64,000 nt of DNA, from positions 44,020,001-44,084,000 of the forward strand of contig NC_088802.1 in the NCBI RefSeq assembly GCF_011386835.1, in the 5' to 3' direction. The first letter of the stretch is position 1. Every line of letters begins with the position of its first letter. The DNA comes from Chrysemys picta bellii (taxonomy: Eukaryota). Under the pieces are notes generated by a model. It did no database searches. It saw only the letters and a program-made list of their open reading frames with translations, and had not been told where the DNA came from. This document shows positions 1,524 to 63,394 of this stretch, piece by piece. Both the position numbers and the translations under genes were made by a program.

Positions 1524-1563
1524 ATGCAGCTGTCCTTTGCTGGGGTGATTCTCTTCCTTGCAG
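1524..1563 (+). CDS. Signal-peptide exon of cassette A
   Basis: ATG 1524, 13 hydrophobic codons + 1 nt, donor cag|gtgag. Flanks are homologous to the leader at 4479 (gaaaagacgt...gaaaggggca...gggtgatt). Confidence 0.75.
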
Positions 1564-2483
1564 GTGAGAGGTTTCGATTGATCCAGTCACACCAGAGAGC
1601 CCACCTGAAAGGGGAGGGATAGCTCAGTGCTTTGAGCATTGGCCTGCTAAACCCAGGGTGGCAAGCTCAATCCTTGAGGGGGCCATCTGGGGCAAAATCA
1701 GCACTTGGTCCTGCTAGTGAAGGCAGGGGGCTGGACGCGATGACCTTTCAGGGTCCCTTCCAGCTCTAGGAGATAGGTATATCTCCACCGATTATTAAGG
1801 CTAATCTACCTACAAACCCACTGAGAGCCAGTCTCCTTTGCTTGCCTTTCAAAAGGAGAGAGGCTAAGGGGGTCTATTGTCAGCTCTCTACAGGGGATTT
1901 ATGCTGGGTAACTTTAGCATTAACACTAACGGGAATCACCCACATACAACCCCTGTGGAGCCAGATGAGACCCTCCCCCTCTATTTCTCTGCTGGTGGGT
2001 AGCACACTGCATGGTCTGATAGGGACCAGCTGGGGGGAGGGAATGGGGCTCCTTGGGGTGTTGAGTTCAAGTTGCCCTTCCGCCTCCTCAACCCCCCAGT
2101 GAAGAGGAAATGACAAGTTTTGCTTTGTATTTCAGGCTACTCCTGTGGGCTGGCTGCCCCGGAGTTGACTGGCCCTGGGGAGGTGAGCAGGCCCCTGGGC
2201 GAGTCGGTGTCTGTGCAGTGTCAGTACCGTGAAAGGTATCAAGGAAATAGCAAATACTGGTGCAGAGGAGCAGTCTGGAGCTCCTGTCACACAGCTGTTA
2301 AGACCACAGGGTCGGAGGCCGAGGCAAAGGGGGACAGAGTCTCCATCAGAGACAACCACAGGCTGCGCACATTCACGGTGACCATGGAGACCCTGACGCT
2401 GGGAGATGCTGGGATTTACTGGTGTGGGATAAGCAAATTTGGATTCGATCCGGGGGTTCCGGTTAAGGTGACTGTTCTCCCAG
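1524..2483 (+). CDS. CD300-like cassette A: leader exon + IgV exon, no own stalk/TM exon found
   Basis: Exons 1524-1563 (MQLSFAGVILFLA-G, GT donor) and 2136-2483 join in frame (phase 1). No stalk or TM exon recognisable before the next leader at 4479. Confidence 0.8.
1612..1795 (+). mobile_element. tRNA-derived tortoise Pol III (Cry-type) SINE
   Basis: gggagggatagctcagtg...gagcattggcctgctaaacccaggg...ctcaatcc (A/B boxes) followed by a CR1-like tail ggtcccttccagctct. Confidence 0.85.
2136..2483 (+). CDS. CD300/pIgR-type IgV exon A
   Basis: Acceptor ttcag at 2135, donor cag|gtgag at 2484, 348 nt phase 1-1. VSVQCQY...KYWCRGAVWSSC...DRVSIRDN...DAGIYWCGI; the extra C-C' loop Cys pair is typical of CD300/pIgR/TREM. 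Confidence 0.93.
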
Positions 2484-4478: not shown

Positions 4479-4527
4479 ATGGGGATGTTGCAGGTGCCCT
4501 TCACCAGGGTGATTCTTCTCCTTCCAG
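4479..4527 (+). CDS. Signal-peptide exon of the CD300LF-like gene
   Basis: MGMLQVPFTRVILLLP-G, donor cag|gtaag at 4528, phase 1. Confidence 0.75.
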
Positions 4528-7500
4528 GTAAGAGGTTTTTATTCCTCCATTCACACCAGAACCACTTTGCCCGGAAGGTCAGTCACCCCACGCTGGAGTT
4601 TCTCTCCCCTTCCTGCTCTCTCTCAACTTCAGAGCGGAGAGAACCTAAGGGGGCATCTCCCGCTCTCCAGCTGGGGATTTACGCTGCGTAACTCAGCAGT
4701 AATGCTGCTAGGCGTCATGTGCATAACCCCGCAGGAACCACATGAGACCTGAGAAATGCTTATTAGCAGGGCTTGGGGAGTACCTGCTTGGCATCCTGCC
4801 ATCCAGTGCATTGCATGGAACGGCATGTATTCAGCATGACACAGGGAATGAGGCCCTTGGGATTTGGGGCTGCTGTCCCATATCCCTCACTCCTGGGGGC
4901 GTGGAGCAGGGTGTTGAGATTTGCTTTGTTTTTCAGGCTATTTCTCTGCCCTGGCTGCCCCGGCACTGACTGCCCCTAGGGAGGTGAGCGGGCCCCCGGG
5001 GGGCACGGTGTCCGTACCGTGTCACTACGGTAAAACAGCTCAGGGATCTCCGAAATACTGGTGCAGGGGAGCACAGTGGAACAGCTGCTCCAAAGTTGTT
5101 GAGACTGAAAGGTCAGAGGTCAAGGTGAAACGGGGCAGAGTCTCCATCACAGACAGTCACAGCACGCGCACATTCACTGTGACCACGGAGAACCTGACTC
5201 TGGAAGATGCTGGGATCTACTGGTGTGGAATAAATATAAAAGGTGGAGGTGATCCTTATTTCCTTGTTAACGTGACTGTTCTCCCAGGTGAGTCTCTGCT
5301 CTGATCTACTGATGGCAACCTGGAGCCAGGGCTGGATTAACTCTCCTGTGGGCCCAGGGCTATGAGATTTTGTGGGGCCCCTGTATACAAGTCTTTTTCC
5401 TAATTTAAAACAAAATTATCACAATTATGGCATTGAGGCTATTAATGCTATACTCAACTTGCCTTTTAGTTAACATAAAGCTGTTCTGTGGTTACATTTC
5501 AGTCTTAAAACATGTAGAATATAGTTAAGTTAATTCAAAAATAGCTTATTTCTTACCTTAGAACAGCTGTTATATTAGTTTCTTTCTGGGAGGGAGTTGG
5601 GGTGCAGGAGGGGGCTCCCGGCTGGGGCAGAGTGTTGGGGTACAGGAGAGGGTGAGGGGTACAGGCTCTGGGAGGGAGTTTGGTGCAAGAGGGAATTCTG
5701 ACCTGGGGCAGGGGGTTGGGGTGCAGGGTCTGGGAAGGGGGTTGGGTGCAGGAGGGGGCTCCCGGCTGGGGCAGAGTGTTGCGGTGCAGGAGAGGGTGAG
5801 GGGTGCAGGCTCTGGGAGGGAGTTTGGTGCAAGAGGGAATTCTGACCTGGGGCAGGGGGTTGAGGTGCAGAGGCACCAACTTTCCCCAGCGCCGCTGGGT
5901 GCTCGTGCCCCCCTACCCTGACTCCACCCTTTCCCTGCCCCACCCCCATTCCAACCCCTTCCCCAAATCCCTGCCCTGGCCCTGCCTCTTCCCCAAGCAC
6001 TCCGCGTTCTCCCTCCTCCCTCCCAGCCATGCAAAACATCTGTTTTGCGGCACAAGCGCCGGGAGCTAGGGGGGAAAAGCGGGCACGCGGTGTGCTCAGG
6101 GGAGAAGGCGGAGCGGAGGCGGAGGTGAGCTGGGCAGGGGGACGGGAAGCTGCCAGTGGGTACAGAGCACCCACCAATTTTTCCCCGTGGGTGCTCCAGC
6201 CCTGGAGCACCTATGTTGAGGTGCAGGAGAGGATGCGAGGTGTAGGTGCTTACCACAGGCAACTCCCGGCCAGTGGCGCAGCAGGGCTCAGGCAGGCTGC
6301 CTGCCTGCAGGCCGTGGCTCCACACCACTCCTGGACGCAGCCCGCTGCTGACACGGGGAGGGGAGCAGCGTCTCCACGTGCGCTGCCCACAGGCGCCCCG
6401 TTCCCGGCCAATGGGAGCTGCGGGGACTGTGCTGGCGGCAGGGGCAACGCGCGGAGCCGCCCCCCTGCCCGGGGCTGCAGAGACATGGCAGCAGCTGGCC
6501 GCTTCTGGGAGCGGCGTGGGGCCACGGCCTGTAGGCAGCCTGCCTGAGCCCTGCTGTACCGTGCCCCCCCTTAGCCCAGGGCTACAGCCCGTAAACCCCT
6601 GCGTTTATCTGGCCCTGCCTGGAGCCCAAGTGTCTGATTGGGGAGTGCTGGTGAGAGACCCAGACAGCTATTTCTAGCCCCAGGATAGCATCCTGGTCAC
6701 TCAACCCTAGTGTACAGCAATAGGCCCGTGCTCGGGTCTGTGGGGCTGGAGAAGTGAGCTGATGTGGGCGCCCAGGGGTTAGCGTATGTATGTGTGTGCA
6801 GGCTACACCTCCTGCTCCCAGGCAGCCGCATGCACCCACTCCGGCAGCAACTCTTAGTGCTTGGAGGGCCAGCAGGGTGCTGCTGGAGGCCTCCAAGCAC
6901 CAAAGCAGGGGAGTGGCGGCAGTGGGCTGCAAGACCCTCCCCGTCACACTAAAGGCAAGTCTGTCGCTGCTGACCTGAGGCTGGGGGCAGAGGGACCGGG
7001 GGGTGGGGGGGCAGGGACTCCTGGCAATTGAGCCAACTATAGGGGAGACTCCCCTACTGAATGCAGGACTGGGATGGGGAGAAGCAGCAGGCGGGAGGGA
7101 GGGGGGATGGAGAGGGGGAGAAGGAAGGAGCACGGAGTGGGGTGTGCTCTACCTTGGGTACCTTGCTCTGCATGCCTTGCTCCATTGCAGCAGGTCTCTT
7201 GGATCGGGCTGGACCCCCAGGCAATAGGGGCTAGTCCCTGAGGGCTCCCCCCTCTGGGCTGGCTCAGGAAACCAAGGTGCAGTGGGAACAGAAGAGCCAG
7301 CGGAACCTGCTCCTTGTGTCGACATTTCCTTGGGAAGATCAACTAAAGGGAACAACTCTGTGTCGAAATTTAAAATGCACACCGTGGCCTGCGTGAGAGC
7401 TGGTATAGGACAGGATCAGTGTGCGGGGGGTGTCTGGGGATCTGGTCCTGGAGCAAGGGGGGGAAAGCGGGTATGATCTCCGGGGAAATCCCTAGAGGGA

Positions 7501-10500
7501 CTCGGGTTTGAATCTCTCCCTTGCTGGGGCGGGGGGGGGGGTAAATATTTGACCAATAACTATTATAGGAAATCGAATGGCCCCCGCAGGGCGAGCGCGT
7601 TGAATCTGGAGACTGCAGGCAGTGCTTAGAGTACAGAATAGAGGGAGATTAGTGCTGCTCGGAGGCCCTGACCCAAAGCCCATTGAAGTCTATGGATACA
7701 CTCCCACTAACGTCAGTGCGCATAAGGCCCTCAGTGCAACCTTAACTATGGAGCTCTGTGATACGTACCCCAGGCGAAATCCCCCCTCCCTCTCCAGTCC
7801 CCACCCTGAGATCAGCCCACTCCCAGGCAGCGCACCCCAGCTCCTTGCCTTCACTCCATTACAGAGCCCTGCTTTCCACCGATGGACAGCAGCTCCCATC
7901 GCCTGGTTGTGTGGTCACTTGTGTGCGGTGGGTTTGCTAGGGACAGTCTAGATCCCAGCGGTCACCTCGCTGCGTGCCAGCTAACACTCATGCTCTGCGC
8001 TAATCCTCCCCCTCGGTGGCAGGCTCAGGTGAGAGGCCAAGAACTGGACTGGGCCTAGAGCCTGATGGCGCCATTCACGCCTAGGGGTGCTAGGTGAAGA
8101 GAGGGCTCCAGCATGGGCAGGCTGGCATCTGCCACTTGAAATGGCAAGACTAAGAACACAGCTGCCTATGGAGACGTGACATTTTGAAGACCTCAGAGCA
8201 TTGTGTTTTCTGGCTTCTATTTTCAGCTCTTTCCACTGCAGTGATGGTAACCACTGGATCTCTCTCCCCAGCAATAGGCACAACAAACACAGCTGAGCAC
8301 CCCAAAAGGTAAGGGCGGTTAAGTACATGTAAAAGCAGGGTCTCAGCTGGGGTGTTCAGGGCTGAATTTCCAGGCCCAGCTTTGCATGCGGGTTGTGGTC
8401 TGCAGCGGCAGAGACGGGCACATCCTGGTTTATGTATGCAGACTAAGGGGCTGGGCATCTCACTGCCTGATTTGTGTCTGCAGATGGGGGATGTTGCACA
8501 TCCAAAACCAGAGAAGTTCCCACCCAGCTGCTGGTGCTCGTGATCATGCACTGCCAGGCTGATGTACCGTTTCCCTGCACCGTACCATCATTTACACAGG
8601 CACAGAGGGAGTGCAAGTCCACTGCAAAAGTCAGTGGGAGAACTGCACAAGTTCTGCAGGCTCAGGCCTGCTGTCAAAGCTACAAAGCACAGAGAGGTAG
8701 AGACACTTCCCCAGGGTCACACAGCGTGTACCATTGGGACAGAGCTAGGACCAGTTCTCGGGTGTTCCTGGACTCTGGTTCTGTGGTCAGGCCACTAGCC
8801 CAGGCTTCCTCAAGACCTTTACTCTGCCTAACTGCACTCTCTCCATTGGTTTCCCTAATAACGCTTTACAATTCAGTATACAAGAAGCTGCCATCTTATT
8901 TCTCACCCTTCCTGAGAGAGAGCGAGATCTTCCCCCAAAGAGCACCCTCGTCCTCCTTCAATCTTCACCGCTCCAAACAGACATGGCTGCAGCAACCAAA
9001 TCCTCTCTTTTCTCTTGGCCTGCTGTTCCCTCTTATTCATATTGCCAGCCCTGTCTGCTCTGCCTTCCCACCCTGCCAACTGTAGCTACCCCTGGTAAAT
9101 TAAATCTTCCCCTTGATCTGGTGACTTAGCCAACTCGCTTACCCTAATTAGATCACATCTCCCTCGGCACACGTGCTAATAAATAAAATTGTCTTGGTTT
9201 CTGAGCTTCTAGCGTTTTGTACAGGACCCATTTAGCGTTTCCCTGCTCCGGCCCTGTCTCTCTTTTGACCCCTAACACTAGCTGATCAAAGATCTCCCTT
9301 TAGCTGTCCTGTGTCTCAGTAGAAACTGAGGGCTGGTCTAAAGCCAGGATTTAAACCGAAATTTAGATCAGCCTAGCAACATTGCTCTGGGGTGTGAAAA
9401 ATTCACACTGTTGAGAGATGTCGTTAAGCCGACCAAAGCCCCAGTATACACAGCCCTAGGTCAATGGAAGAATTAGTCTACCTAGCTCCTGCCGCTCGCA
9501 GGGGTGGATTTACTACAATGATGGACAAACCCCTTCTCTCACTGTAGCAAGCGTCTACATGACAGCGCAGCAGCAACGCTGTCACTGTGCTGCCGTAGTG
9601 TAGACAAGCCCCCAAAGGGGTCATTTTTATACCAATTCAGTTAAACTGGTGTAACTTTGTGTGTGGACACTTACATGGATTTAAAGCTGGATTATAGCAG
9701 TTCAGCAGGGTCAGTAAATGATCAGCTCCACGCTAAACCCCATATAACCAGTTTTAAAAACTGATACAGGAGCCTTCACGCAGGGCAGTGCAATAGTTTA
9801 ACAGCATCTGTTTTTTAATTACACACAGGGGAGGGGCCGAGAAGCAGCATGGCCTGTAAGTGGCTGCTGGCGGGCCACTATACAGAGGTGCATTTGCACG
9901 AATACCTAGGGCAGGGCTGGCTTTGTTCCCCGACTGAATTTCCATCATCCCCGTCCCAGACGGGCAGGCAGTGTCAGAGATGTGTTTTTCCTTTGTCTTC
10001 CAGTTCTCCTTTCACCAGCACTATGTTCCTGCTGCCAATGCTCCTGCTGGTTTTACTTATATTACTGAGCGGAGCCATGGTTCTGGCCAGAAGAATGATG
10101 CTGAAGAGGAAAAAGGGTGAGAGGCCGAAGGTGGGGGCTGCCCCGGATTCATCTGGCTCTGCCCTCCTTTCATTTCTTTTCCTCTCTCATTTCTCTCCCC
10201 CACCCCACCATCACTTACTCCCTTGGCCAATAAAGCTTTGTGAAGCCCTGATCCTAACCGCTTAGTCTGCCAAAAATCCCATGCAAATCAGGAGTTTTGC
10301 CTCAGTAACCAGTTCTCCCATTTCTATGTTCAGTGCAAGGGAAGTGGTTTAACAGAACTGCACTTATTTACACAGCAGCCAGACTGAGCTAAGCACGATA
10401 GAGACACCTAGTGAGACACGGTTCCTAGAGGGAAGGGCTTTCAATCAAAGCCGGCAACATCCAGGCCCAGCAGCGGGGCTGGGAGTCAGAGTCCCGTTAT

Positions 10501-22517: not shown

Positions 22518-22542
22518 ACACACACACACACACACACACACA
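22518..22542. repeat. (AC)n microsatellite
   Basis: Seen directly. Confidence 0.9.
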
Positions 22543-42100: not shown

Positions 42101-42177
42101 TTCAGAACCACGGACAGCTCCCACCCAGCCGCGCGTTCTAGCGGAAGCGGGACCGGTCCAGGACCAAGGACAGATCC
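42101..42177 (+). promoter_or_regulatory. Two RE1-like sites in a small CpG-rich patch
   Basis: ttcagaaccacggacagctcc (42101-42121) and tccaggaccaaggacagatcc (42157-42177). Confidence 0.55.
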
Positions 42178-43400: not shown

Positions 43401-43581
43401 GGGAGGGATAGCTCAGTGGTTTGAGCATTGGCCTGCTAAACCCAGGGTTGTGAGTTCAATCCTTGTGGGGGCCATTTTGGGAACTGGGATAAAATTCTGT
43501 CTGGGGATTGGTCCTGCTTTGAGCAGGGGGTTGGACTAGATGACCTCCTGAGGTCCCTTCCAACCCTGATATTCTATGATT
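43401..43581 (+). mobile_element. tRNA-derived tortoise Pol III (Cry-type) SINE
   Basis: A box tagctcagtgg, B box gagttcaatcc, CR1 3' tail ...ttccaaccctgatattctatgatt. Confidence 0.88.
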
Positions 43582-47615: not shown

Positions 47616-47628
47616 GAGGAAGTGAAAC
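47616..47628 (+). promoter_or_regulatory. PU.1/IRF composite element (EICE, GGAAgtGAAA) upstream of leader C
   Basis: gaggaagtgaaac ~165 bp upstream of the ATG, with further Ets cores at 47641 (ggaagt) and ~47720 (ccggaaat). Confidence 0.55.
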
Positions 47629-47780
47629 AGTCAAGAGAAAGGAAGTCCGAAACAAAATCCATTTGTCAGTATGTTTTAGATTCGAGAAAACACAGAGCCC
47701 TGCCTTCATTGAGACCGCACCGGAAATGCAGATAGCTACCTACAGTCCACATTCTGCTGTCTGAAGAAAGAACCGGGACC

Positions 47781-52370: not shown

Positions 52371-53449
52371 TGTGACAGTCTGTACCCTTATGTTCACCAT
52401 TTTTTGCAAGACAATGATCATTTTTGTACAAAGTATGCTTTGCAAGGTATCGTTTGCAAGCTCATAATCTGCTGATCATCAAATAAAATATGGGTGGCAA
52501 CATTGTATGTAAAGTTACAAGATTCTACTGCATAACATTCCTGAGACATGTTCCAAGTTGAGAAAAGCAGGCACAAGCCAGTTCCTCACAGACAAAAGAC
52601 AAATTGATGCCTCGGCCAGTTGTCAACAAAATCATATGACCTCTTCTTCTTTGGCAGGAAGAAGGATGTGAGTGAGAAATCTACATTTTGATAAACAAAC
52701 AGCCGGGGTTTCCTGTCTCCTCGGACCTTATTTCCTGAATCTCAGCTGAAGATGAATTCTTGCAAAAGAGAAATGGCTATAAGAGGAGAAGGCAAATGCC
52801 CCAAAGGTTTTCTTCCTCCTGTTCTCTCTGCTATACCTGAAGGACAAGGGAAGGAGCACTGGGCGGGAGGAGAAGTCCTGGCTGAAAGGTATCCAGCCAG
52901 TAAGACTTAAAAAGCATGTGATGAGAGAAAGCTTTGCTTTGAATTCATTTAGCCTAGTCAGTTAGGTATTAGTTGTGTTTTGCCTTTTATTTCTTTGTAA
53001 CCAATTCTGACATTTATGTCTCATTACTTGTGATCACTTACGCTCTTTCCTTCTGCAGTCAATAAACGTGTTCTATCTAAACCAGCGTGTTTGGACTGAA
53101 GTGTTTGGGAAACTCCATTTGGGGTGACAGGATTTGTGCATAGCATTTTCTATTGATGAATGATGGACTTTATATGAGCTTGTATTGTCCAGGAGGTGCG
53201 CTGGGAAGTGCAAGACACATTTCTGGGGGAGATTCTGGGACTGGGAGTTTGCTGGTGTTGCCCTGCAGTGTAAATCATGAGTGGCTGGCATAGCACTCAT
53301 ATAATATAACTGGGAGTGAGTTGCATGCTGGAGGCCGGGTGTGAGCAAACCAGGAGCGGTTGCTCTCACAGTGAAGCAGTTTAAAAGGCGCCCCAGGTTG
53401 GAGAATTGAGGGAACACAGCAGTTCAGGCTGTACCTGGGGAATGTCACA
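52371..53449. mobile_element. Solo LTR (ERV/Gypsy-like), 1079 bp
   Basis: TGTGACA...TGTCACA termini, 5-bp TSD gtaag (52366-52370 / 53450-53454), internal AATAAA. The 3' half is also in copy 1 (~45725-46231). Confidence 0.8.
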
Positions 53450-54834
53450 GTAAGGGAGAATTTTCATAAGCACAGTTGATGTGTGGGGCTGCAACCAGAT
53501 TATCAGCCCAGCATTGGGCAACAGCTGGAGTTCTAGTGCATGTAGGTGTACAGGCATTAGGCAGTATCCCTTTAAATAATGGGGAGACCTCACATGGGCC
53601 TCCCTGTCTTCTCTAACAGAAGTGTATACATGTAGCTAGATGTTGTATATAGCTAGTAAACACATGGTTGTTTGGGACCCAACTGTGTTCATGTGGTTTC
53701 CTCTTATTTTTAATGTGTTGAGAGCAAAGACAACAGTGAGGCACTAATACTATGGTGGTTAATGTGGTTTAAGTAGAGTCAGTTCCTCGACTGTGTCCTC
53801 TACCTTTGGTTACAGAGCAGGAGACAGAGATGTTCCTGTACGATATCGTTACAATGAAGTTCTGAACACTTAAGCTACAGGGAGAGATACACCACTAGAG
53901 AGGGCCAGGAAATTATCCCCCCTGCACAAACAATGTTGCAAAAACAGAAATTCTCATTTTTTGTTGAAATGTTTGATCTTTTCACCAAAATAAAGCCCCC
54001 CAAACACTCAGCTCCTGACCATGGAAAATTTCTATATTTTTATGAAAACCCAAACAATTGTGATGAAAACGGAAATGTATTGAAAAAATTCTATCCGCTC
54101 AAAAAGCCATTTTCCATCAACGAAGCTTTTCGATAGAAGATTTATGACCCTTCTGTCTCTGCAGATATTCCTCCCTGCCTTGCTAGGTGGGCCCCATCTC
54201 TGCTCAGCTCTCCTGCTTCTCAGAGCAGCATCCCACAGTTGAGAAAGCTGAAGCCCCCCGGTGACCCCATGTGCGCAGCCAGGCATTCACCTCCATTCAC
54301 TTCTCACATTCTAATCACTAGGCAAATGTGATGACTGGTTTGCTGGAGTAGAAGTGAAAGCCGAGTCCAGGCTATTAAGAATATAGTGAAGACGGCTTAT
54401 TTGTAGTGGCTCTGTTGACTGATAGTACATTTGCCTTCTCCCTATATTGAGTCTGAACCTAATAGGTCTAAGCAGCCTCTGCACTGGGTACCTTCAACTC
54501 CCACAGACTAACAGGAATTGAAGGTGCTGAGCTGAGCACCCCACAGGATCAGGCCCATATTTCTAGGTTCTTGGGGGGGTTATTAAATCTAAAAGCATCC
54601 ACCCGCTTTGTATCTCGTTTTAGGCATTGGGTAGCCCCAGTAACTTGTGCTTTGGGGGCACGTTGAGATGTTCCATGCTGGGAGGGGTGCAGGAGTTACG
54701 AATTAGACTTTGACTGGACTGTGAAACAGAAACGTCAGACGGATCTGGTTCCCTCTAAATAAAGGCGGTTGAAATGACACATTCTAAAAAAGCCACCCCC
54801 ACAGAATGAGACCACTCAGCTGCCACAAGTTCAG

Positions 54835-54847
54835 GAGGAAGTGAAAC
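54835..54847 (+). promoter_or_regulatory. PU.1/IRF composite element upstream of leader D
   Basis: Identical to the copy at 47616. Confidence 0.55.
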
Positions 54848-55003
54848 AGTCAAGAGAAAGGAAGTCCGAAACAAAATCCATTTGTCAGTATGTTTTAGAT
54901 TCGAGAAAACACAGAGCCCTGCCTTCATTGAGACCGCACCGGAAATGCAGATAGCTACCTACAGTCCACATTCTGCTGTCTGAAGAAAGAACCAGGCGAG
55001 ACC

Positions 55004-58000
55004 ATGCGGAGTTTCCTTGTCTGGGCTTGGATTCTTTTCCCAGGTGAGACGGGATTCTTTATGTCAATAGAAATAGACCCGGGAGGCAGACCTGCTCCCA
55101 CTGGGGCAATAGGAGCTGTGGCTGCTACGCATTTCTGCAGTCAGGTCCTCTACCCAAGTGCCTGACATTAGGCACAGGTTTGAACAGATGACAGCAGAGA
55201 ATGTCCTAGTTTAAAGCCAACCTGCAGGAATCCCCATGGACCTGGAGAAAATGTCCTACCTAAAAGCCAAAACAGTTCAATGCTGCAGTGGGTTGAAGTG
55301 GTCTGGAAGATCTCACAAACCAGGGCCCTTTTAGTACCACAGTTTCTCCATTGAGATAGGGGGAGGAATTACCACCTAATAATTGTACCCTACCCTGCCA
55401 CCAATGGCTCCGGAGGATTGTCCTCTAACTTCTCTTAACACATTTTCCTCTCCTCCCTCAAACCGCATTCGGCAAGTTGTTTTGAGAAGGAATTTCACTG
55501 CAGTCAAATGCTCTGCAGATGGTAGTAACATCCCCAGTGCAGTCACTTCCAAGGGGGATGCAGACTGGTTATGCACCTATTTTTTGTTTGCTTGCTTTTT
55601 AAATAGCATTCTAAGGTTGGGTTTTCAATGTCACATATGTGACACAGGAGAACAAGTGGCATTGAAAGGCTCTGGGACCTGGGCTCCTATGTCACTTAGA
55701 CACCTGACAAACCTGACCAATGCAGTGAGTATTTCTATCTGAAAAGGCACAAAAGGAGAACAATACCATGATTTGGGGGGGGTGGGAGGACAGGGGAGAG
55801 ATTAGAAAAGAGCCAAGACACACTCACCGTGTGTAAAACTACTGCAGCCATCATTCAGATGGACCAGGGCACTCTCACAAGCAAACACTTTAGTCTCCGT
55901 GGAAATCTCTTAGAGGTTGGCTTTGGGTACCATACTGGGGAGCGGTGACCTGCAGTTTGGTGGTGGTAACTGAAAACCATTGCATACTAATATGTAAATG
56001 ATTCATTTGATCACAGAGATGACTGACAAGTGTGATGCCCATTGCCAAGCATCAGGTGCCCAACAGAGTTTGTTTCATAGTCAGTTTAGTCTTCTACTTT
56101 CTATGTAACATAGGTCCTTGTGAGCTTGCCTGCTCCCTCCACCCATCCCAAAGGTTAACTAGGGCAGCAGTGGGTTCCCCTCCATGATCAGAAGTGATGT
56201 TAAAGCCATAGTTTAGCTGATCTCAGCAATGTCAAGGAGGCTCTCCAATACCCTGCCCACAGGAGTGTCTGAGCACGTGAAAGGAGATAAAGCATGTAGA
56301 AGATTTTCAGACTCTCCTAAATTGGTTAGTCATTCCCCCCGCTCATATAATAAAGTTGTGGGAAAGCTAAGTCAGGGAATCGTCTGTGGCATTCTCAGGT
56401 TCACGGTGCTACATGAGCAGGCGCTGTATTTTAGAAGGACACTAACAGAGAAAGCAGAAGGGGGATTTTTTATGTTTCTCTTTGGCTTTGGCTTTCTGTG
56501 GGGGTGGAGAGAGGAGGTGACGTCCCAGATGATTCCATCTCCCCACTACCCCACACTGGGAACAAATCGCCTTACATCTATTGGCTATTCATCATAATCT
56601 TAAGCCCCACCTCCTGCATTACTGGAGCAGGTGGTTCTCAAATGCGGCCACCACGGCCACATGTGGCCACAAGGGGCTTTTCATGCAGCCACGGCCTCCT
56701 GGGCGGTGGCCGGGTGGGAGGGAGGGGGACGAAAGCAGTGTTAACAAACATACAGATATCACTTTCCACGGAAACAGACTTACTAGCTGGGAAGTCCTAA
56801 AAAATGCAACGAAACAAGCAAAAGAAACAACAACAAAAGACAAGAACATGCAAAGCACCTGTTTTGTTTCTATTCTATTTAGATCCAGTAAAGAATAGAG
56901 ACAACTGTACATTATTTTTATTATTGAGTCTGCAATAAAAACCTCCCTAAATGAATTACAATGATTTGGACATGGATATGTGAATATTTATTTTTCCTAA
57001 AGTTGATTAAGTACTTTAGGAAAAAGTGTCAGGACGGCCACCAGCAAATTGGTGGCTGCATTCAGAGGCCACCAAAACATTTCTTGTGAGACCTATCCTC
57101 CCAACACCCCTGTGAGGCAGGAAAGCCCCATTACCTAAGGCCCAGGCTATCAGCTTTCACCACCTTACATCCACCACAAAGCAGCCGTCTCCTTCCACAC
57201 AGGAATATCCATGCACAAAAGCTTGGTATGGCTAACTAGTTCTGAACTTTGTCTCTTTGTCACTGGTTTTTGCTCAGCAGGAAAGCAATGAAAGCAATTT
57301 TGTCTTTTGCAGGCTGTTGGGCTCTGACCGGCCCTAGGGAGGCGAGCGGTCCCTTGGGAGGGTCGGTGTCTGTGCAGTGTCAGTACGATGGGGGGTACCA
57401 GAACTATAAGAAATACTGGTGCAGAGGAAAAGACTGGTCATCTTGCTCCATGGCTGTTTGGACCATAAGTTCAGAGGCAGAGGTGGTAAAGGACAGAGTC
57501 TCCATCCAAGACAATCACACGCAGTTCACTTTCACTGTGACCATGCGGAGCCTGGCACTGGGCGACCAGGATATTTACTGGTGTGGGATAGAGAAGAGCG
57601 GCTTTGACAAGATGTTTGCTGTCAACGTGTCTGTTTTCCCAGGTAAGTCCTTTAAGTGTGGGACGTGTTGTGCCAGTCACCCAGCACCGTGAGCAGTGTG
57701 GCTGCTGCTAAGGTAGGAGTCAGCACCCTGCAACACCAGCTTGTCTACCCACCCAGCACACTCCTGAGGACTCTGCCAGTCCAAACCTTGCCTGGCAGGT
57801 AGCAATCAGTGAACCGCAATTCCCGAGTTCCCAGAGATGGGTCTTTGCAGCCGCCAGGCCCTCTCCGTGGACACTCACAGAAAAGTTATTGCGTTTGCTG
57901 GCTCCAAAGAGACAGAACACACACCAGCCTGTTAGTTTAGCTGAGGACTTCACCTCTCAGTTTAATACACAGCCCTGTGCTGGTTTTGTAATAAAACGAG

Positions 58001-61000
58001 AGTAGCTTTGTTAACAAAGAACAGATATGTAGGTGATATAAGGAAGAACAGAAGACAAGTAAAACAAAACAAAAACACGCTTTCTAGTGACTGAAACTTA
58101 ATTCAGCAAGTTACAATCTTTGTCTAAGAAGGTTTCTCACCTATAGTCAGTTCCCAGAGACATCAACCCTCTTGGCTGAAGGATCCACCTTTGTCCGATT
58201 ACCAAAGCTCTGGCCTCTTGTGTCCCATGAGTGATGGATGCCAAAATGCCTTTCTGCTTATATTTCCCAAAGTCTATATTCTCTGTTTCAAGTGGTAGGA
58301 AGGTGTCCCAGGGGTGCAGGCTCCATCCACACTCATGATTGTTAAGCTGTCTCCACCCCCCACCCCCCGCCAGTCCCTTGTTAAGCTTGATGGTGCATTG
58401 GTTACCTTATATGTAGATGTACTTTCCATTGTCGTCTGCGGTACCACCTAGCTTAGTTCAGATTGGAGACACAAACAACATACCTTTCTCTGGGACAGGC
58501 TGGGCTTATGCACGGGTTGCAAACCACCTTTTAAGAACATATTTTTCAGCACATGTCTATAGTTCTTTATACACTGCCTATACCTCCAGCACGCAATAAT
58601 ATTAACGAGCAGTGTGTTACCAGTTTGCATAGGATACCATATATGACAGAGTCCAGAGACAGATTCTGACAACAGTGTGTTGGGGCAATGAGTGTGTCGT
58701 GCCTGACATGAATTATGGCCTGAGGTTCCCTGTGCCAGATGGGACTGAGGGGCTCCCTGGGTCACAAGTGGCTCTTGTCTTGACCAAGGACACGTATTTG
58801 ATGAATAGAGGGGTCTTATCCAGACATGAACTATCCAACTCTGTTAATCTTCTGTCACCCCCTTCACAACATTGGGAAACTCACACTTGTTTCCTAGGTT
58901 TTCCCAGGCAACTGATTCCCCGCACCCCACCACCACCACCACCCCATCCCTCATGCAGGAGAGGGAATTAGTGCTGGAGGATGCAGCCTCACATTACATC
59001 TGCCAGTTCTTACTCGGGCAAAACTCCCATTGAAATTCATGCAGAGTCTGCCTGAGTGAGGACTGCGGGATCAGATGAACAGTTAGACCCAGGATCAATA
59101 CAGGCCCAGGGAGGTGGGACGGAGGGGAGATAAGCGAGTAGTTTTAAATGCCACTGATTTGCAAATATTTGTGCAAAGTAAGGGGACGGAAAAAGAGACT
59201 TTGCTATGAATGAATTATTCATGAATATTTGGCTGCCACCTGGATACTTATGACAAAAGTTATCAATCCTAAACAAGTTTCATGACTTTTAGCAGAGATG
59301 CTTGTTAGTCCCAAAAGTCACATTTTACAGGAATTCTTCACTATTTGTTATTAGCTAGTCTCACACTGAGAATTGTTAAAGTCATCCACTGAGAAGGTAG
59401 GGGTAGAGCTATTCCTGAGGTCTGTGTTAGGTAGGTTATAAAATAAATAAAGGCGTCCATTCAGTCCTACAGTGAACAGTGCAATCTCCACCAGCGGGTA
59501 TCTGAATGGAGTGGAGAAGAACATGGACTGAGATGTAGGTGCAGAGGGAAAGGGAGGAGAAGCCAGGGCCTGTCTGCAGGAATTTCCTTTCACCATAGTA
59601 TCTTTTCCTTCAATAAAAGCTTCGCTGGTTTTCCATTGCTAACCCTATTCCGTGATCAGTGACTGAGAAATGGACCATAATAAAATACTCCAGAGCTCCA
59701 AGATACAGCAAAGAGGAAAAAAGATACAGCAACATCAGCAGCAGAACAAGGAGATAGCCAGTGCATTTTAAAGGCAATAAATCTATGTCTGATAAGAGGG
59801 GAATGTAGTCTCCATAATACATAATTAACCCGTGGAACTCACTGCCACAAGATATTGAGGTCGAGAGTCTAGCAGGATTCAACCTTCTTATGAATAATTA
59901 AGCTATCCAGTCACCCTGGGTAAGGACAGAATTATGTCCAAGGGCTTCAAAGACAGAATCAGCCACGAAGTGACGAGAGTTAGGAGTAAGTGCCCATATG
60001 GTTATGCTATTTCAAAATTGTCCATAATGGGGTTTCTTGCACCTTTTTCTGAAGCATCTGGTATTGGCCACTGTCTGACAGGCTCCCTAGCTAGATGGAC
60101 AGTTTATTTGACTCAGTATGCTGATTCCCATGTTCCTATCTAGATGGATGTCTCAATGGAGTGGGGAAGAATATGGACGGAGATTCATAGATTCATAGAT
60201 TCTAGGACTGGAAGGGACCTCGAGAGGTCATCGAGTCCAGTCCCCTGCCTGCATGGCAGGACCAAATACTGTCTAGATGGAGGTACAGAGGGAAGGGGAG
60301 GAGAAGCCAGGGGCTATCTGCTCACTTGTGGGCCAATAATGCAGGATGAGCCATTTAAACACCATGTGCTCATGTCAGAATAGTTGTGTCTCATTTCCTA
60401 CCTCTGCTGCCATCATTGATCCCTGCAGAGGAAGCCAAGTCTTGTTCATTTTCCCCAGACCCTCAATATTGTTGGAGTTCCCCCAAAACCTCTTCCATTT
60501 AGTTCCCCCAAGAACTCAGTCCGACTCCTATCTCGTCCCTCAGGTTCCTTTATTTGATATATAGCAAATCTACCTTATCTCACTGGGGGCCATCAGCAGT
60601 TGAAGTAGGATCAGGGCCGGCTCTGGTTTTTTTGCCGCCCTAAGCAAAAAAGCCACCCGCCGCCCCCCCTCCCAGCGCGGCAGGGGAGGGCGCCGAGCCC
60701 GGCTGCGGGCCCGCAATCCCCGACCGGCCGGAGTGCCGGGGGGAGGGCAGAGAGCCCCCGGCGGCCAGAGCACCAGCGGGAGGGCGGAGAGCCCGGCTGG
60801 GGCTCTCCGGTCTCCCCGGCGGCCAGTGTGCCGGGGGGAGGGCGGCGAGCCCTCTGTGGCTCCGCTCTCCCCGGCGGCCGGAGCGCCGCGGGGAGGGCGG
60901 CGAGCCCAGTCAAGGCCCTGCTCTCGGGCCGGAGCGCCCCGCCACGCCGCCCCCCTCCAGGTGCCGCCCCAAGCACATGCTTGGTGGGCTGGTGCCTGGA

Positions 61001-63394
61001 GCCGGCCCTGAGTAGGATACAGAATTACAGCTACTGTGTTAAAACAACACAACACCACCCCACCTTTCTCTGCTTGCAGTGGCCTAGTTAGTACACACGT
61101 CACGGAGCTTTAACAGCCCAGCCACCAGGAAGGCAGGTGCCGGCACGAACAGGAAATCAATAAACAAGGGCTCGGTAATACAGCTCTGTCTGCTTTCATT
61201 TGCAGCTGTTCCTACCTCACCACCGACGACACCAGAAAAGGACCTGACCGTTGCCACCTCCCCATGGACTGTTCCTGAAGTGGAAAAATCCACCTCCTCC
61301 TTTAACAGTAGTCATCCTCCTGCCAGGTGAGTGCCCAAACTCATGCTAGAGGCACTGTGAGGTCTCCTTTCACCAGCTCTAGGGCAGGTTTGGGGTTTCT
61401 ACACTGTGCTCTGAAATCAGGGCTACAATCCCTACAGAGGCCAAGGCTTCAAGTAAGCAGCACGGAGGATTCTAGAACTCTCAGGTCTCTGCACACCAGA
61501 GGCATTGAAGAAAAGGATTTGTAGCTGAGTTTACAAGTTGAGATGGGGCATTTATCATCTAAGTCAGAGCCAGACAGTCCTGCTGTTATACAGTCCTTCC
61601 TGTCCTGCAAACTATGTTCTGCCCTGGAAGGTGAATTCCATTGCATTATACTGTATTAAACCCACACTTGCAAACAAAAAGAAAGCAAACTCCCTCCCTT
61701 CCCCCACACTCACCACTCTTCCAGCCTGACATGGTCCAGTTTTAAAGTGCTAGCACTGCATTTCCCCTCACATCTGACCTGCAGGACTCTTGCTATTCTA
61801 TTGGGCTTTCCAGTCAGCAGGGCCGGTGCTACCATTTAGGCAAACTAGGCGGTTGCCTAGGTCACCAAGAAGTGGGTGCCCCCAATTTTTTTTTTTTACA
61901 GCGTTCCTACGCCCCCTCCCCGAGCGCGCGGTCGCCGCTCCACTTCTCCTGCCTCCCAGGATTGCAGCGCCAATCAGCTGTTTGGCGCCGCAAGCCTGGG
62001 AGGGGAAGACAATTAGAGCGGGTTCGGCGTGCTCGGGGAGGAGATGGAGCAGAGGTGAGCTGGGGTGGGGAGCTGCCGCACGGCTCCCCCGGGGGGGGGG
62101 GCGCCTCAGGGTGGAGGGGGTCGGGAAGCTGCCGCAGGGCTGGGGGGCGCAAGGTGGAAGTTTCACCTAGGGCGTGAAACTTCCTTGCACCGGCCCTGCC
62201 AGTCAGGCAGGGAGATATACTGTATATGTCAAACACATGACAGAATACCTGATATTGTCCATTGATTCCTTCACACTGCGGCAGAAGCAGTTTACAAACC
62301 CCAACACTGGAAGTGGTTTGTGACATTAAATTCTGTATGATTGTGTCTTTAAATTTTTTAATCAGAAAAGCCAAAACTTCATGGCAAAAGATACAGTGCA
62401 AGTCTCTAATTGAATAACATCTAACACTTTTTCTCCACAGATCTCCAAGCATTTCGCAAAGGAGGTCAGTATCATTAACACCATTTTATAGATGGGGAAA
62501 CTGAGGCAGAAGAGGTGACATGACTTGCTCAGGGTCACCCTGCAGGCCAGTGGCAGAGCCAGGAATAAAACCCAGGTCTCCTGATGCTGGGGCCAGGGCT
62601 CTCACCACTAGATAACACTGCCATCCCTAAACAGAACAGGGGTTTTACCCTTGCTTAGCTGAAAATAGTCTGACAGTTTTAACCTGATCATTTAATTAAG
62701 TCAATTTAATCAATAAAAAGGGTTTGCTTTTATAATGCCAACCACAGTGGTCCTGTTAGGGTCACTACAATCGCCCCCACTGCTGTTGCACTCTGTAGGT
62801 TTTTGTTGAGATCAGACCTTTGTTAGGTATTGTGCTGAGCCCAGAAAACTCATGTCTCCAATCACCTCAGAGTATTTAGGTGCTTAACACTCATTGAGGT
62901 CAAGGGGAGTTAGACATCTAAATGTGTTTAAAGACCTAGGCCCTAGTACACGTTTAAACCCAGCTGTGCAGAGAGGAAAGCTAGGACTGCTTTAGATTGC
63001 CAAATTTTCCTTTGCTGAATGGTTTCTGTTTATTCAGTTTGATGCTGAAATCCAGCGTAGCAAGGTGTTAGCCTCAGCTCTGCAACTGACTCCATGTGCT
63101 TCTTTGACGCAAGTCACTGTACTTGTGCCTCAGTTTCCCAGTTGTAAAAAACAGATAGGGGTTGGCTAATACTTCCCCACCCTTTCCAACAACTTGAGAG
63201 GGGAGCAAGAGCTACGTCTAATCTTTATATAACAAACCGTAACCGTTAAGAGTAGAAACAAACATTCTCTTCTCCTTCGCCTAGTATACCAAACCTCGTC
63301 CTCTACATCCTGATCCCATCTGTCCTGCTGGTTCTACTTTTGATTTTGTTCATTGCTGTAAAGTTTAGAAGAGCATCACAGAGGAGGAGCAAAG
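55004..63394 (+). CDS. CD300-like receptor D (leader, IgV, stalk, TM; cytoplasmic exons beyond the window)
   Basis: Exons 55004-55043, 57313-57642, 61206-61326, 63285-63394 with phases 1,1,2,1 and canonical splice sites. Confidence 0.85.
57313..57642 (+). CDS. IgV exon D
   Basis: 330 nt phase 1-1; 17 nt / 9 aa different from exon C by manual comparison. Confidence 0.93.
57690..58766. mobile_element. LTR-like element downstream of IgV D (truncated copy ~50550-51386)
   Basis: Ends in ...gggtcaca and has LTR-like composition. 5' boundary and TSD not resolved. Confidence 0.45.
59780..60140 (+). mobile_element. Degenerate CR1 fragment
   Basis: ataattaacccgtggaactcactgccacaag...gggtttcttgcacctttttctgaagcatctgg. 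Confidence 0.62.
60181..60277 (-). mobile_element. CR1 3' terminus
   Basis: attcatagattcatagattctaggactggaagggacctcgagaggtcatcgagtccag (terminal 8-bp repeats). Confidence 0.8.
60612..61010. mobile_element. hAT-type MITE
   Basis: TIR cagggccggctc / gagccggccctg, 8-bp TSD agtaggat. Confidence 0.88.
61206..61326 (+). CDS. Pro/Ser/Thr-rich stalk exon (AVPTSPPTTPEKDLTVATSPWTVPEVEKSTSSFNSSHPPA-S)
   Basis: Acceptor ttcatttgcag, donor cag|gtgag, 121 nt phase 1-2. Confidence 0.85.
61818..62198. mobile_element. hAT-type MITE
   Basis: TIR cagggccggtgc / gcaccggccctg, 8-bp TSD ccagtcag. Confidence 0.88.
62465..62625 (+). mobile_element. MIR-like CORE-SINE
   Basis: ccattttatagatggggaaactgaggca...gtgacatgacttgctcagggtcac. 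Similar remnants near 820-1010, 3900-4095, 12400-12520, 16150-16310, 41230-41450, 49850-50040, 63060-63170. Confidence 0.7.
63285..63394 (+). CDS. TM exon (SIPNLVLYILIPSVLLVLLLILFIAVKFRRASQRRSK)
   Basis: Acceptor tctccttcgcctag, donor aag|gtaaaa, 110 nt phase 2-1. No charged residue in the TM. Confidence 0.87.

What the first reader, a model, noticed from the sequence alone, without database searches (positions are those of the whole stretch)
1524..63394. Recurrent 'spare variable cassette' architecture: promoter-leader-IgV modules stacked upstream of a shared stalk/TM/tail in CD300 genes
Seen: twice in this window an intact leader+IgV unit with canonical splice sites but no stalk/TM exon sits directly upstream of a complete receptor (A 1524-2483 before B 4479-14030; C 47781-50502 before D 55004-63394). 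All IgV exons are phase 1-1 and both stalk exons start in phase 1, so L-V(up)-stalk, L-V(up)-V(down)-stalk and L-V(down)-stalk would all be in frame. Established: promoter-choice variable exons spliced to constant exons exist in protocadherin and UGT1A clusters, while mammalian CD300s are typically one IgV per gene. Inference: turtles may diversify CD300 ligand-binding heads on a common signalling tail by promoter choice, or build two-domain receptors. The pattern arose at two different ages (A/B strongly diverged, C/D ~95% identical), which suggests a repeated mechanism.
Basis: partly seen in the sequence, partly recalled or inferred. Interest (0 to 1): 0.8.

Follow-up and report, generated by a model that had tools for sequence, protein, structure and literature searches.

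The report
Turtle CD300 genes with duplicated heads
In the painted turtle CD300 immune-receptor cluster the promoter-leader-IgV "head" module was duplicated twice: the old copy is spliced in as a second Ig domain of one inhibitory receptor (already in RefSeq), and the young copy gives only a truncated head-only transcript, so this is ordinary exon duplication and not a protocadherin-style promoter-choice system.

Summary
The sequence observation holds. There are four intact IgV exons, all phase 1-1. Each has its own leader, and they sit in two tandem pairs: A/B about 75% identical, C/D about 95%.

The window is Chrysemys picta bellii (C12:44.02-44.08 Mb).

**A/B is one gene.**
- RNA contigs from three studies and two species join VA to VB (2483>4937).
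- Contigs from two studies, both species, join VB to the stalk (5287>8227).
- Leader B has no coverage in any of the four runs.
- RefSeq already lists all three in-frame forms, and each maps 100% onto the window: X1 LA-VA-VB-tail (419 aa), X3 LA-VA-tail, X2 LB-VB-tail.
- Two-V orthologues are annotated in at least seven other turtle species.

**C/D is different.**
- C is a roughly 6 kb tandem copy of D's 5' end.
- It is transcribed, but RefSeq splices VC (50502) to an exon at 52658. A stop follows after four codons (127 aa, IgV only).
- No model joins VC to D's stalk, and I could not lay reads there.

**Side finding.**
- An inverted copy of LB-VB, 99% identical in the V exon, heads a gene 219 kb away that has a lysine in its transmembrane span.
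- This makes an inhibitory/activating pair.
- It also makes the support for isoform X2 ambiguous.

Verdict: real, partly as predicted, largely already annotated, and with close precedents. Modest interest.

The parts
1524..1563 (+). Leader exon A. First coding exon of the CD300f-like (CMRF35-like molecule 1/8) gene; 40 nt, ends in phase 1.
   Evidence: Exact mapping of RefSeq isoforms X1 (P0162) and X3 (P0168).
2136..2483 (+). IgV exon A (VA), 348 nt, phase 1-1. It is domain 1 of the two-V receptor.
   Evidence: RNA-like runs hold up to 90% of its 31-mers. Its donor at 2483 is joined to 4937 in X1, X4 and X6.
4479..4527 (+). Leader exon B, 49 nt. An intact internal alternative first exon, used only in RefSeq isoform X2. 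Not covered by RNA in the four runs laid.
   Evidence: P0158. Zero depth over 4309-4708. Identical (49/49) to the leader of the inverted paralogue.
4937..5287 (+). IgV exon B (VB), 351 nt, phase 1-1. It is domain 2 of the two-V receptor and is skipped in isoform X3.
   Evidence: Joints 2483>4937 and 5287>8227.
8227..8308 (+). Stalk exon of the A/B gene. Starts in phase 1.
   Evidence: Joined to VB in X1, X2 and X6.
10004..10116 (+). Transmembrane exon of the A/B gene. The membrane span is uncharged.
12106..12143 (+). Small cytoplasmic exon of the A/B gene.
12752..12886 (+). Cytoplasmic exon carrying the VSYASV and VEYSAV ITIM-type motifs.
   Evidence: The motifs were read from the P0162 sequence.
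13878..14030 (+). Last coding exon of the A/B gene, with ISYATV, YINV and TEYCAV motifs and the stop codon.
45489..51386 (+). Tandem duplication unit 1. It carries cassette C: promoter region, leader C, VC and 0.9 kb of intron. It lacks the 1.29 kb segment that holds exon U.
   Evidence: Self-BLAST.
47781..47820 (+). Leader exon C. It differs from leader D by one synonymous base.
50173..50502 (+). IgV exon C (VC), 330 nt, intact. It differs from VD at 17 of 330 nt.
   Evidence: Its 31-mers are held at share 1.00 by RNA-like runs from studies P1 and P5.
51389..58513 (+). Tandem duplication unit 2, which is the 5' part of gene D.
52658..52671 (+). Coding start of exon U (GA AGA AGG ATG TGA). In RefSeq's 127-aa model of C it is the acceptor for the VC donor, and the frame stops here. 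The exon continues as non-coding sequence. An AATAAA lies at 53061-53066.
   Evidence: It is homologous to a 5' exon in the Pangshura model of the D orthologue.
55004..55043 (+). Leader exon D.
   Evidence: P0070.
57313..57642 (+). IgV exon D (VD).
   Evidence: 100% identical to RefSeq P0070.
61206..61326 (+). Stalk exon of gene D. Starts in phase 1.
62441..62464 (+). Mini-exon of gene D.
63285..63394 (+). Transmembrane exon of gene D. The cytoplasmic exons lie beyond the window, at C12:44088685 and 44089164.

Best explanation
Both pairs come from the same kind of mutation: tandem duplication of the 5' module (promoter, leader exon, IgV exon) of a CD300 gene. They have had two different outcomes.

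**(1) A/B, the old duplication (dS about 0.42, shared by many turtle families).**
- It is now one CD300f-like inhibitory gene.
- IgV exons are phase 1-1 internal exons, so the donor of the upstream V splices to the acceptor of the downstream V.
- The main transcript in the runs laid is LA-VA-VB-stalk-TM-tail. That is a two-IgV ectodomain on a tail with three ITIM-type motifs, one YxN and one ITSM-type motif.
- Skipping VB gives a VA-only form (RefSeq X3).
- Starting at the internal leader B would give a VB-only form (RefSeq X2). That form is unproven.

**(2) C/D, the young duplication (about 5% divergence).**
- Copy C is transcribed from its own promoter.
- Its V donor is captured by exon U at 52658, which is D's upstream non-coding exon. 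There the frame stops after four codons.
- C therefore yields a 127-aa leader+IgV open frame and does not share D's stalk, TM or tail.
- D is expressed as an ordinary one-V receptor.

**Shown versus inferred.**
- Shown: exon anatomy, the duplications, the VA>VB and VB>stalk junctions, and transcription of VA and VC.
- Taken from RefSeq models only: X2, X3 and VC>U.
- Inferred: that the two-V form is the major product in vivo, and that C's product is either a secreted head-only protein or a decay substrate.
For: **Anatomy and duplications**
- Phases, exon anatomy and duplication structure.

**RNA contigs laid on 2309-8308**
- GT..AG joint 2483>4937 in X1, X4 and X6 (three studies, two organisms).
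- Joint 5287>8227 in X1, X2 and X6.
- Zero depth in the introns (2709-4908 and 7309-8108), so these runs are spliced RNA and not DNA.
- Zero depth over leader B.
- In X4 one contig carries 27 nt of VA, all of VB and 14 further letters.

**RefSeq models**
- Isoforms X1 (419 aa), X2 (306 aa) and X3 (302 aa) of one C. picta gene map 100% onto the window with canonical splice sites.
- Two-V orthologues exist in Terrapene, Malaclemys, Emys, Trachemys, Gopherus, Mauremys and Macrochelys. Two Pfam V-set stretches were checked directly only in C. picta, Gopherus and Mauremys.

**Cassette C**
- VC is 76% distinct from VD at the 31-mer level.
- Its words are fully held by RNA-like runs of two studies, including X1, which one search showed to be spliced RNA.
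- RefSeq P0169 (127 aa) maps as 47781-47820 / 50173-50502 / 52658-52671. That is the only place in the window that can encode its C-terminus, and it sits behind a good polypyrimidine-AG acceptor.
- P0070's 90% cluster holds no VC-bearing isoform, and no two-V C-D model appeared among proteins of 155-492 aa.
Against: - The RNA evidence is assembled contigs, not reads. It cannot give isoform proportions. In two of the three VA>VB joints the shorter side is only 26-27 nt.
- The four runs were chosen because they hold VA, so they are biased against detecting leader-B transcripts.
- VA>stalk (X3) was not seen directly. Only the contig break-points in X4 hint at it.
- X2 may be real. Carettochelys has a model with a leader-B-type leader and a single VB-type V (P0116).
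- The VC>U junction rests on one Gnomon model. I could not lay reads on C/D, so a minor in-frame VC>VD or VC>stalk form is not excluded.
- dN/dS between VC and VD (0.48, from 11 nonsynonymous and 6 synonymous differences) does not tell constraint from neutrality.
Confidence: 0.72

Rival explanations
1. Each leader+IgV module is a promoter-selected variable cassette spliced directly onto a shared stalk/TM/tail, as in protocadherin or UGT1A. This would give one-V receptors with alternative heads at both loci.
For: - RefSeq isoforms X2 (LB-VB-tail) and X3 (LA-VA-tail) exist and map exactly.
- All combinations are in frame.
- A Carettochelys model uses a leader-B-type leader with one V.
- A Chelydra GenBank model joins a VA-type V directly to the stalk (P0066).
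Against: - The junction actually seen in RNA contigs of three studies is VA>VB, which is a two-V form.
- Leader B has zero depth in all four runs.
- X3 comes from exon skipping off the same promoter, not from promoter choice.
- The LB>VB junction sequence is identical to that of the paralogue LB'>VB', so the support for X2 is ambiguous.
- For C/D the only model sends VC into exon U with a stop.
- There are only two modules per gene, and V exons have acceptors, unlike protocadherin/UGT1A first exons.
Confidence: 0.15
2. Cassette C is a working gene for a secreted, head-only CD300 protein that acts as a soluble competitor for D's ligand. On this view it is not a neutral by-product of duplication.
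For: - VC is intact, with conserved cysteines and splice sites.
- It is transcribed in several studies.
- RefSeq models a 127-aa signal peptide + V-set protein.
- Polarised by eye against Mauremys, Gopherus and sea-turtle sequences, C and D each carry 3-4 derived residues, so VC has not drifted further from outgroup V domains than VD.
- Soluble relatives are known: carp SITR and soluble TREMs (PMC3031540).
- An AATAAA lies 400 nt after exon U.
Against: - At 5% divergence an intact 110-codon exon is expected even without selection.
- dN/dS of 0.48 is not significant.
- If the transcript runs on into D's exons, the early stop would mark it for nonsense-mediated decay.
- There is no protein evidence.
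Confidence: 0.25
3. C/D is not a true duplication. On this view it is two diverged haplotypes of one locus placed in tandem by the assembler.
For: - An older C. picta Ensembl protein (P0083) has a V domain 88-91% identical to VC and VD, and it is absent from this assembly. So the locus varies between assemblies or haplotypes.
Against: - There are no gaps, and the junction at 51386/51389 is clean.
- Divergence is 5% plus a 1.29 kb indel, far above allelic levels.
- VC-specific words are held by independent DNA-scale runs and by RNA runs of several studies.
- RefSeq annotates both as separate genes.
Confidence: 0.04

Closest known systems
Mammalian CD300f / CLM-1 (CMRF35-like molecule 1)
   Same: - The best single-domain solved-structure matches are CLM-1 (5or7, 2nms, 1zox).
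- V-set domain with four cysteines and the YWC(R/K)G motif.
- Uncharged TM and a long tail with ITIM/ITSM-type tyrosines.
- The tail matches the same Pfam SIT-like profile as bat CLM-1 models.
- It sits in a cluster of CD300 paralogues.
   Different: - The main turtle product has two IgV domains. Human and mouse CD300 proteins are described as having one (PMC3031540).
- This is not unique, though. RefSeq models of bat and desman CLM-1/CLM-5 carry two or three V-set domains.
Chicken TREM-B2, a sister family of V-set innate receptors
   Same: - Tandemly duplicated V-set exons, 97.4% identical in chicken.
- cDNA-verified splice variants with one, two or four Ig domains on the same TM and ITIM tail (PMC4788293).
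- This is the nearest precedent for the A/B isoform set.
   Different: - Different family and chromosome.
- No internal second leader or promoter is described there.
Polymeric Ig receptor (pIgR)
   Same: - The VA-VB ectodomain (residues 30-229) aligns as one continuous stretch with two consecutive V domains of pIgR (chain residues 227-426; E about 1e-45).
- The V domains are of the same type, strung head to tail with short linkers.
   Different: - Two domains, against four or five.
- The tail has ITIM-type motifs, unlike a transcytosis tail.
- The gene lies inside the CD300 cluster.
- Ig binding was not tested.
Protocadherin and UGT1A variable-exon clusters
   Same: - Several alternative 5' units lie upstream of shared constant exons.
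- Each unit has promoter-like sequence of its own.
   Different: - In protocadherin/UGT1A each variable unit is a single first exon without an acceptor, so variable exons never join each other (established knowledge).
- Here each unit is leader + internal V exon, and VA is seen spliced to VB.
- There are only two units, and use of the internal promoter is unproven.
Paired activating/inhibitory receptors such as CD300A/CD300C
   Same: - The VB head occurs, with 4 of 351 nt different, on a second gene whose TM carries a lysine and whose tail is short. That gene lies 219 kb away and is inverted.
- So a near-identical head sits on an inhibitory tail and on an activating-type tail, as in CD300A/C (PMC12447643 abstract).
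   Different: - In the inhibitory partner the shared head is the membrane-proximal domain of a two-V receptor.
- Association with an adaptor was not tested.

Membership tests
CD300 / CMRF35-like family | Extracellular Ig domain of the V-set type | tested here: met
   Pfam V-set hits: P0162 has 2 stretches (E 1.4e-34), P0169 has 1, P0070 has 1.
CD300 / CMRF35-like family | Two disulfides (four cysteines) and the conserved YWCR-type motif in the V domain | tested here: met
   Read from the translations. All four V exons have C...YWC(R/K)G...SC...YWCG. The motif definition is from PMC3031540.
CD300 / CMRF35-like family | Closest characterised relatives are CD300 proteins | tested here: met
   Database hits are named CMRF35-like molecule / CD300. 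Solved single-domain matches are CLM-1, CLM-6 and CMRF35-H.
CD300 / CMRF35-like family | A single IgV domain per protein | tested here: not met
   The main A/B transcript and RefSeq X1 have two V domains. D, X2 and X3 have one. The gene is therefore a two-V variant inside the family.
CD300 / CMRF35-like family | Either an uncharged TM with an ITIM tail or a charged TM with a short tail | tested here: met
   A/B has an uncharged TM and a tail with VSYASV, VEYSAV, ISYATV and TEYCAV (sequence). The paralogue B' has lysine in its TM. Signalling itself was not tested.
CD300 / CMRF35-like family | Binding of lipids (phosphatidylserine, phosphatidylethanolamine, ceramide) | not testable with these tools
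   Needs binding assays with VA, VB, VA-VB and VC ectodomains.
Promoter-choice variable-exon cluster (protocadherin / UGT1A type) | Each variable unit is a first exon with its own promoter and no 3' splice acceptor, so variable exons are never joined to one another | tested here: not met
   V exons are internal exons behind separate leader exons. The VA donor is joined to the VB acceptor in three runs and in RefSeq X1.
Promoter-choice variable-exon cluster (protocadherin / UGT1A type) | Each variable unit is transcribed from its own promoter and spliced directly to the first constant exon | tested here: inconclusive
   X2 (LB-VB-stalk) and X3 (LA-VA-stalk) exist as models. Against that, leader B had no RNA depth, X2 is confounded by the identical paralogue, and VC goes to exon U, not to D's stalk.
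Polymeric Ig receptor | Four to five tandem V-type domains (two in teleosts) and a non-ITIM tail that drives transcytosis | tested here: not met
   Two V domains align to two consecutive pIgR domains. But the tail carries ITIM-type motifs and matches the CLM-1-type tail profile, and the gene lies in the CD300 cluster.

The most novel reading that the evidence does not exclude
The turtle CD300f-like gene deliberately presents three different ligand-binding heads (VA, VB, VA+VB) on one inhibitory tail. It does this through regulated exon skipping and an internal promoter, in a cell-type-specific way. The VB head is kept matched by gene conversion to an activating partner 219 kb away. The young cassette C supplies a secreted head-only decoy for receptor D. 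Together these would form a small combinatorial system for tuning innate recognition, built from repeated duplication of a promoter-leader-V module.
Probability: 0.15. Interest if true: 0.5.

Novelty: new member of a known kind. Interest (0 to 1): 0.3.

Why it matters
The finding shows in one 64 kb window how innate immune receptors gain and lose domains. The same 5'-module duplication has become a stable second Ig domain in one gene, kept across turtle families. In the neighbouring gene it has become a truncated head-only transcript.

It corrects the working assumption that CD300 receptors have a single V domain. RefSeq models of turtles, several bats and a desman have two or three.

It also flags a practical trap for annotation. 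An identical leader-V module elsewhere in the cluster can lend false support to an alternative-promoter isoform.

None of this opens a long-standing question. The isoforms are already in RefSeq, and chicken TREM-B2 is a published precedent.

Tried and rejected
**A dedicated TM exon for A.**
- A Chelydra Ensembl model (P0003) joins VA to the homologue of window 3093-3290, which encodes a hydrophobic stretch.
- All four RNA runs have zero depth over 2709-4908.
- Rejected for C. picta and the Trachemys-like organism B.

**Ensembl 'exons' in the GC-rich block 5.5-6.6 kb (P0004, P0014).**
- This block is a dispersed repeat with a 144-bp tandem array.
- It has very high RNA depth, with many loose ends and non-canonical 'joints'.
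- Treated as spurious.

**Looking for transcript-derived ORFs that carry VC plus its next exon.**
- Only the RefSeq 127-aa model came back from the protein collection.

**Look-ups that returned nothing.**
- The look-up of encoding contigs for P0070: nothing on record.
- The search of earlier findings: nothing for this place or for 'CD300'.
- tRNA scan: none found.
- Literature: no paper on turtle CD300 in the held library.

**Reading the de Bruijn break-points in X4 as evidence for VA>stalk.**
- The contig ends exactly at 2483, and the next contig starts exactly 16 nt before 8227. Sixteen nt is the length of the 3' end that VA and VB share.
- This is suggestive only and is not counted as shown.

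**Explaining the contig break at 4959/4960 in X1 and X6.**
- I tried leader-B usage and the VB' paralogue as causes. Neither fits.
- Left unexplained.

**Reads on C/D.**
- The junctions 50502>57313 and 50502>61206 also span more than the 6 kb allowed.


Full report
**What is there**

The window is G000:C12:44020001-44084000 of a 2.37 Gb genome. RefSeq proteins of Chrysemys picta bellii map onto it at 100% identity, so it is the painted turtle CD300/CMRF35 cluster.

Four IgV exons lie on the + strand, each behind a short leader exon. I fixed the exact exons by requiring the spliced translation to equal the RefSeq proteins:
- LA 1524-1563
- VA 2136-2483
- LB 4479-4527
- VB 4937-5287
- A/B constant exons 8227-8308, 10004-10116, 12106-12143, 12752-12886, 13878-14030
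- LC 47781-47820
- VC 50173-50502
- LD 55004-55043
- VD 57313-57642
- D constant exons 61206-61326, 62441-62464, 63285-63394; the rest of D lies beyond the window

All leaders end in phase 1. All V exons are multiples of three. Both stalk exons start in phase 1.

**The duplications**

Self-comparison gives two pictures.

C/D is a clean tandem duplication.
- 45489-51386 matches 51389-58513 at 94.5-95.0%.
- The copied segment holds the promoter region, leader, V exon and 0.9 kb of the following intron.
- Unit 2 carries 1.29 kb (51658-52946) that unit 1 lacks.

A/B is much older.
- Identity is 74% over the leader regions and 76% over the V exons.
- Between VA and VB, dS is about 0.42 and dN about 0.27.

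VC and VD differ at 17 of 330 nt. That matches the flanking non-coding divergence. There are 11 nonsynonymous and 6 synonymous differences (dN/dS about 0.48, too few to interpret).

A census of the genome found 18 V exons between 44.02 and 44.32 Mb on C12. Among the 13 whose TM exon I could place, every one other than A/B and C/D is followed by its own TM exon. For the last five (44.26-44.32 Mb) no constant exon was matched.

**A/B is one gene with two V exons**

VA's 31-mers are held at up to 90% by small RNA-like runs of several studies. I laid four of them (X1, X2 of study P1; X4 of P2; X6 of P3; two organisms) on 2309-8308.
- The introns 2709-4908 and 7309-8108 have zero depth in all four. 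That shows these are spliced RNA, not DNA.
- A GT..AG joint 2483>4937 (VA donor to VB acceptor) is present in X1, X4 and X6.
- A joint 5287>8227 (VB to stalk) is present in X1, X2 and X6.
- In X4 a single contig holds 27 nt of VA, all of VB and 14 more letters.
- Leader B (bins 4309-4708) has no depth in any run.
- No 2483>8227 joint is listed.
- X2 also has a contig reading through the VA donor to 2619, which is unspliced or retained intron.

The differences that the organism-B contigs show in VB match the Trachemys scripta protein P0161. So the two-V junction is seen in two species.

**It is already annotated**

The 90% cluster of the Terrapene protein P0094 contains C. picta XP_023957464.2 (isoform X1, 419 aa) and XP_005297694.3 (isoform X2, 306 aa). 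A second cluster holds XP_023957465.2 (isoform X3, 302 aa). All three map exactly onto the window:
- X1 = LA-VA-VB-stalk-TM-tail
- X2 = LB-VB-stalk-...
- X3 = LA-VA-stalk-..., with VB skipped

Two-V orthologues of 407-425 aa are annotated in Terrapene, Malaclemys, Emys, Trachemys, Gopherus, Mauremys and Macrochelys. I checked two Pfam V-set stretches directly in the C. picta, Gopherus and Mauremys proteins. Carettochelys has a one-V model with a leader-B-type leader (P0116).

The tail carries VSYASV, VEYSAV and ISYATV (ITIM-type), YINV and TEYCAV (ITSM-type), read from P0162. It matches the same Pfam tail profile as bat CLM-1. Single V domains match solved CLM-1/CD300f structures. The VA-VB pair aligns as one stretch to two consecutive pIgR domains.

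**A caveat about isoform X2**

Searching the genome with VB found an inverted copy at C12:44243821-44244221, 99% identical. The copied segment corresponds to window 3486-5598. Compared with the window:
- Leader B is identical (49/49).
- The intron differs at 6 of 409 positions.
- VB differs at 4 of 351. All four are nonsynonymous (R>S, G>D, F>S, V>L); G>D, F>S and V>L lie around the FG loop and G strand, R>S on the E strand.
- The flanks are about 6% diverged.

Downstream on that strand lie two things.
- A dead leader relic: ATG>ACG, a 1-nt insertion and a lost donor.
- A TM exon with a lysine in the span and a short tail.

So VB is shared between an ITIM-tailed gene and an activating-type gene, the classical paired-receptor pattern. 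LB'>VB' junction reads are identical in sequence to LB>VB reads. The support for X2, and hence for use of an internal promoter in the A/B gene, therefore cannot be taken at face value. Neither leader was covered in the four runs laid, but those runs were chosen for holding VA.

**C/D behaves differently**

VC is transcribed.
- 76% of its 31-mers are absent from VD.
- RNA-like runs of studies P1 and P5 hold all sampled words. These include X1, which one search showed to be spliced RNA.
- DNA-scale runs hold 96%. This also argues against an assembly artefact.

The protein collection holds one model with VC: RefSeq 'CMRF35-like molecule 3', 127 aa, ending ...VSVFPGRRM. Only one place in the window can encode that end behind an AG. 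It is 52658, preceded by ctcttcttctttggcag, and reads GA AGA AGG ATG TGA. The model maps as 47781-47820 / 50173-50502 / 52658-52671.

This exon U lies in the 1.29 kb that only unit 2 has. It is homologous to a 5' exon in a GenBank model of the Pangshura orthologue of D. It therefore looks like D's own upstream non-coding exon, which now captures the donor of the duplicated V. An AATAAA follows at 53061.

D itself is annotated as a one-V protein (P0070, 322 aa). The 90% cluster of P0070 has no VC-bearing member. No two-V C-D model was among proteins of 155-492 aa.

VC>VD or VC>stalk as minor forms are therefore not excluded.

**Mechanism and comparison**

The recurrent event is duplication of a promoter-leader-V module. 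It has happened at least three times in this cluster: A/B, C/D, and B to B'.

Ig exons are symmetrical phase 1-1 internal exons. A duplicated V upstream of another V is therefore spliced to it by default, which gives an extra domain. This is unlike protocadherin/UGT1A, where variable exons are first exons without acceptors (established knowledge). Where another acceptor intervenes, as exon U does in C/D, the upstream copy is truncated.

Precedents:
- Chicken TREM-B2 has duplicated V exons and cloned one-, two- and four-domain splice variants (PMC4788293).
- Multi-V CD300 models exist in bats and a desman.
- Soluble CD300-like proteins exist in fish (PMC3031540).
- No paper on turtle CD300 was found.

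**Verdict**

Novelty is a new member of a known kind, and for A/B the isoforms are already in RefSeq. Interest is modest.

Noticed in passing
window 3486-5598 and G000:C12:44239784-44247873 (loci L001, L002): An inverted copy of the LB promoter-leader-VB module heads a second gene 219 kb away. That gene has a lysine in its TM span and a short tail (activating type). The V exon differs at 4 of 351 nt, all nonsynonymous; three lie around the FG loop and G strand. The leader is identical and the flanks are about 6% diverged. This looks like a paired inhibitory/activating receptor kept similar by gene conversion.
   Followed up: partly
G000:C12:44242696-44242807 (- strand; L001/L002): A dead leader relic sits between VB' and the TM exon of the paralogue. 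It has ATG>ACG, a 1-nt insertion and donor GT>CT. This is what an unused leader looks like, in contrast to the intact leader B in the window.
   Followed up: partly
window 4937-5287: 9 of 10 differences between the Trachemys-like RNA contigs and the window in VB change the amino acid. VA shows 0-1 differences in 175 nt. VB may be under diversifying selection. Position 5167 C/A is polymorphic: RNA contigs of both organisms and the older Ensembl protein carry A.
   Followed up: partly
window 5509-6600: A GC-rich block with a 144-bp tandem repeat (5585-5870). It has very high RNA contig depth, many loose ends and non-canonical joints, so it is a dispersed transcribed repeat. Ensembl models of Terrapene and Chelydra (P0004, P0014) read it as coding exons after VB, which is probably spurious.
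   Followed up: partly
window 4959-4960: In X1 and X6 the contigs with the VA>VB joint and the long VB>stalk contigs break at exactly this point, inside a CCCC run. Neither leader B nor the VB' paralogue explains it.
   Followed up: partly
window 30045-31229 and 42000-44200, 60500-62200: CpG-rich blocks (GC about 0.55-0.62) with long open frames on both strands and short tandem repeats (34-bp unit at 30656-30809; 55-bp unit at 60756-60907). A Platysternon protein named 'sterol O-acyltransferase 2' (P0087) starts with the translation of 30265-30594 fused to a CD300 tail, which is a likely mis-annotation. The Pangshura D-orthologue model has a weak match at 42106-42213, possibly a distal first exon.
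   Followed up: no
window 1612-1762 and 43401-43562: Two copies (76% identical) of an interspersed repeat. One lies in the LA-VA intron. It reads like a tRNA-derived SINE, but that was not tested.
   Followed up: no
window 10117-10265: The frame stays open past the TM-exon donor (ORF 9849-10265). A Macrochelys model (P0092) reads through the same donor, which would give a two-V receptor without the ITIM tail. This may be an alternative truncated isoform or an annotation artefact.
   Followed up: no
protein P0083 (older C. picta Ensembl model) against G000: Its V domain is 88-91% identical to VC and VD but has no match above 92% in this assembly other than VC and VD themselves. That suggests copy-number or haplotype variation in this part of the cluster, or a chimeric old model.
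   Followed up: no
window 47757-47780 against 54977-55003: Just upstream of the ATG, leader exon C keeps the sequence seen in other turtles (translating as SEERTGT in their extended models). Leader exon D has a 3-nt insertion and substitutions. So the upstream copy is the more conservative of the two here.
   Followed up: no
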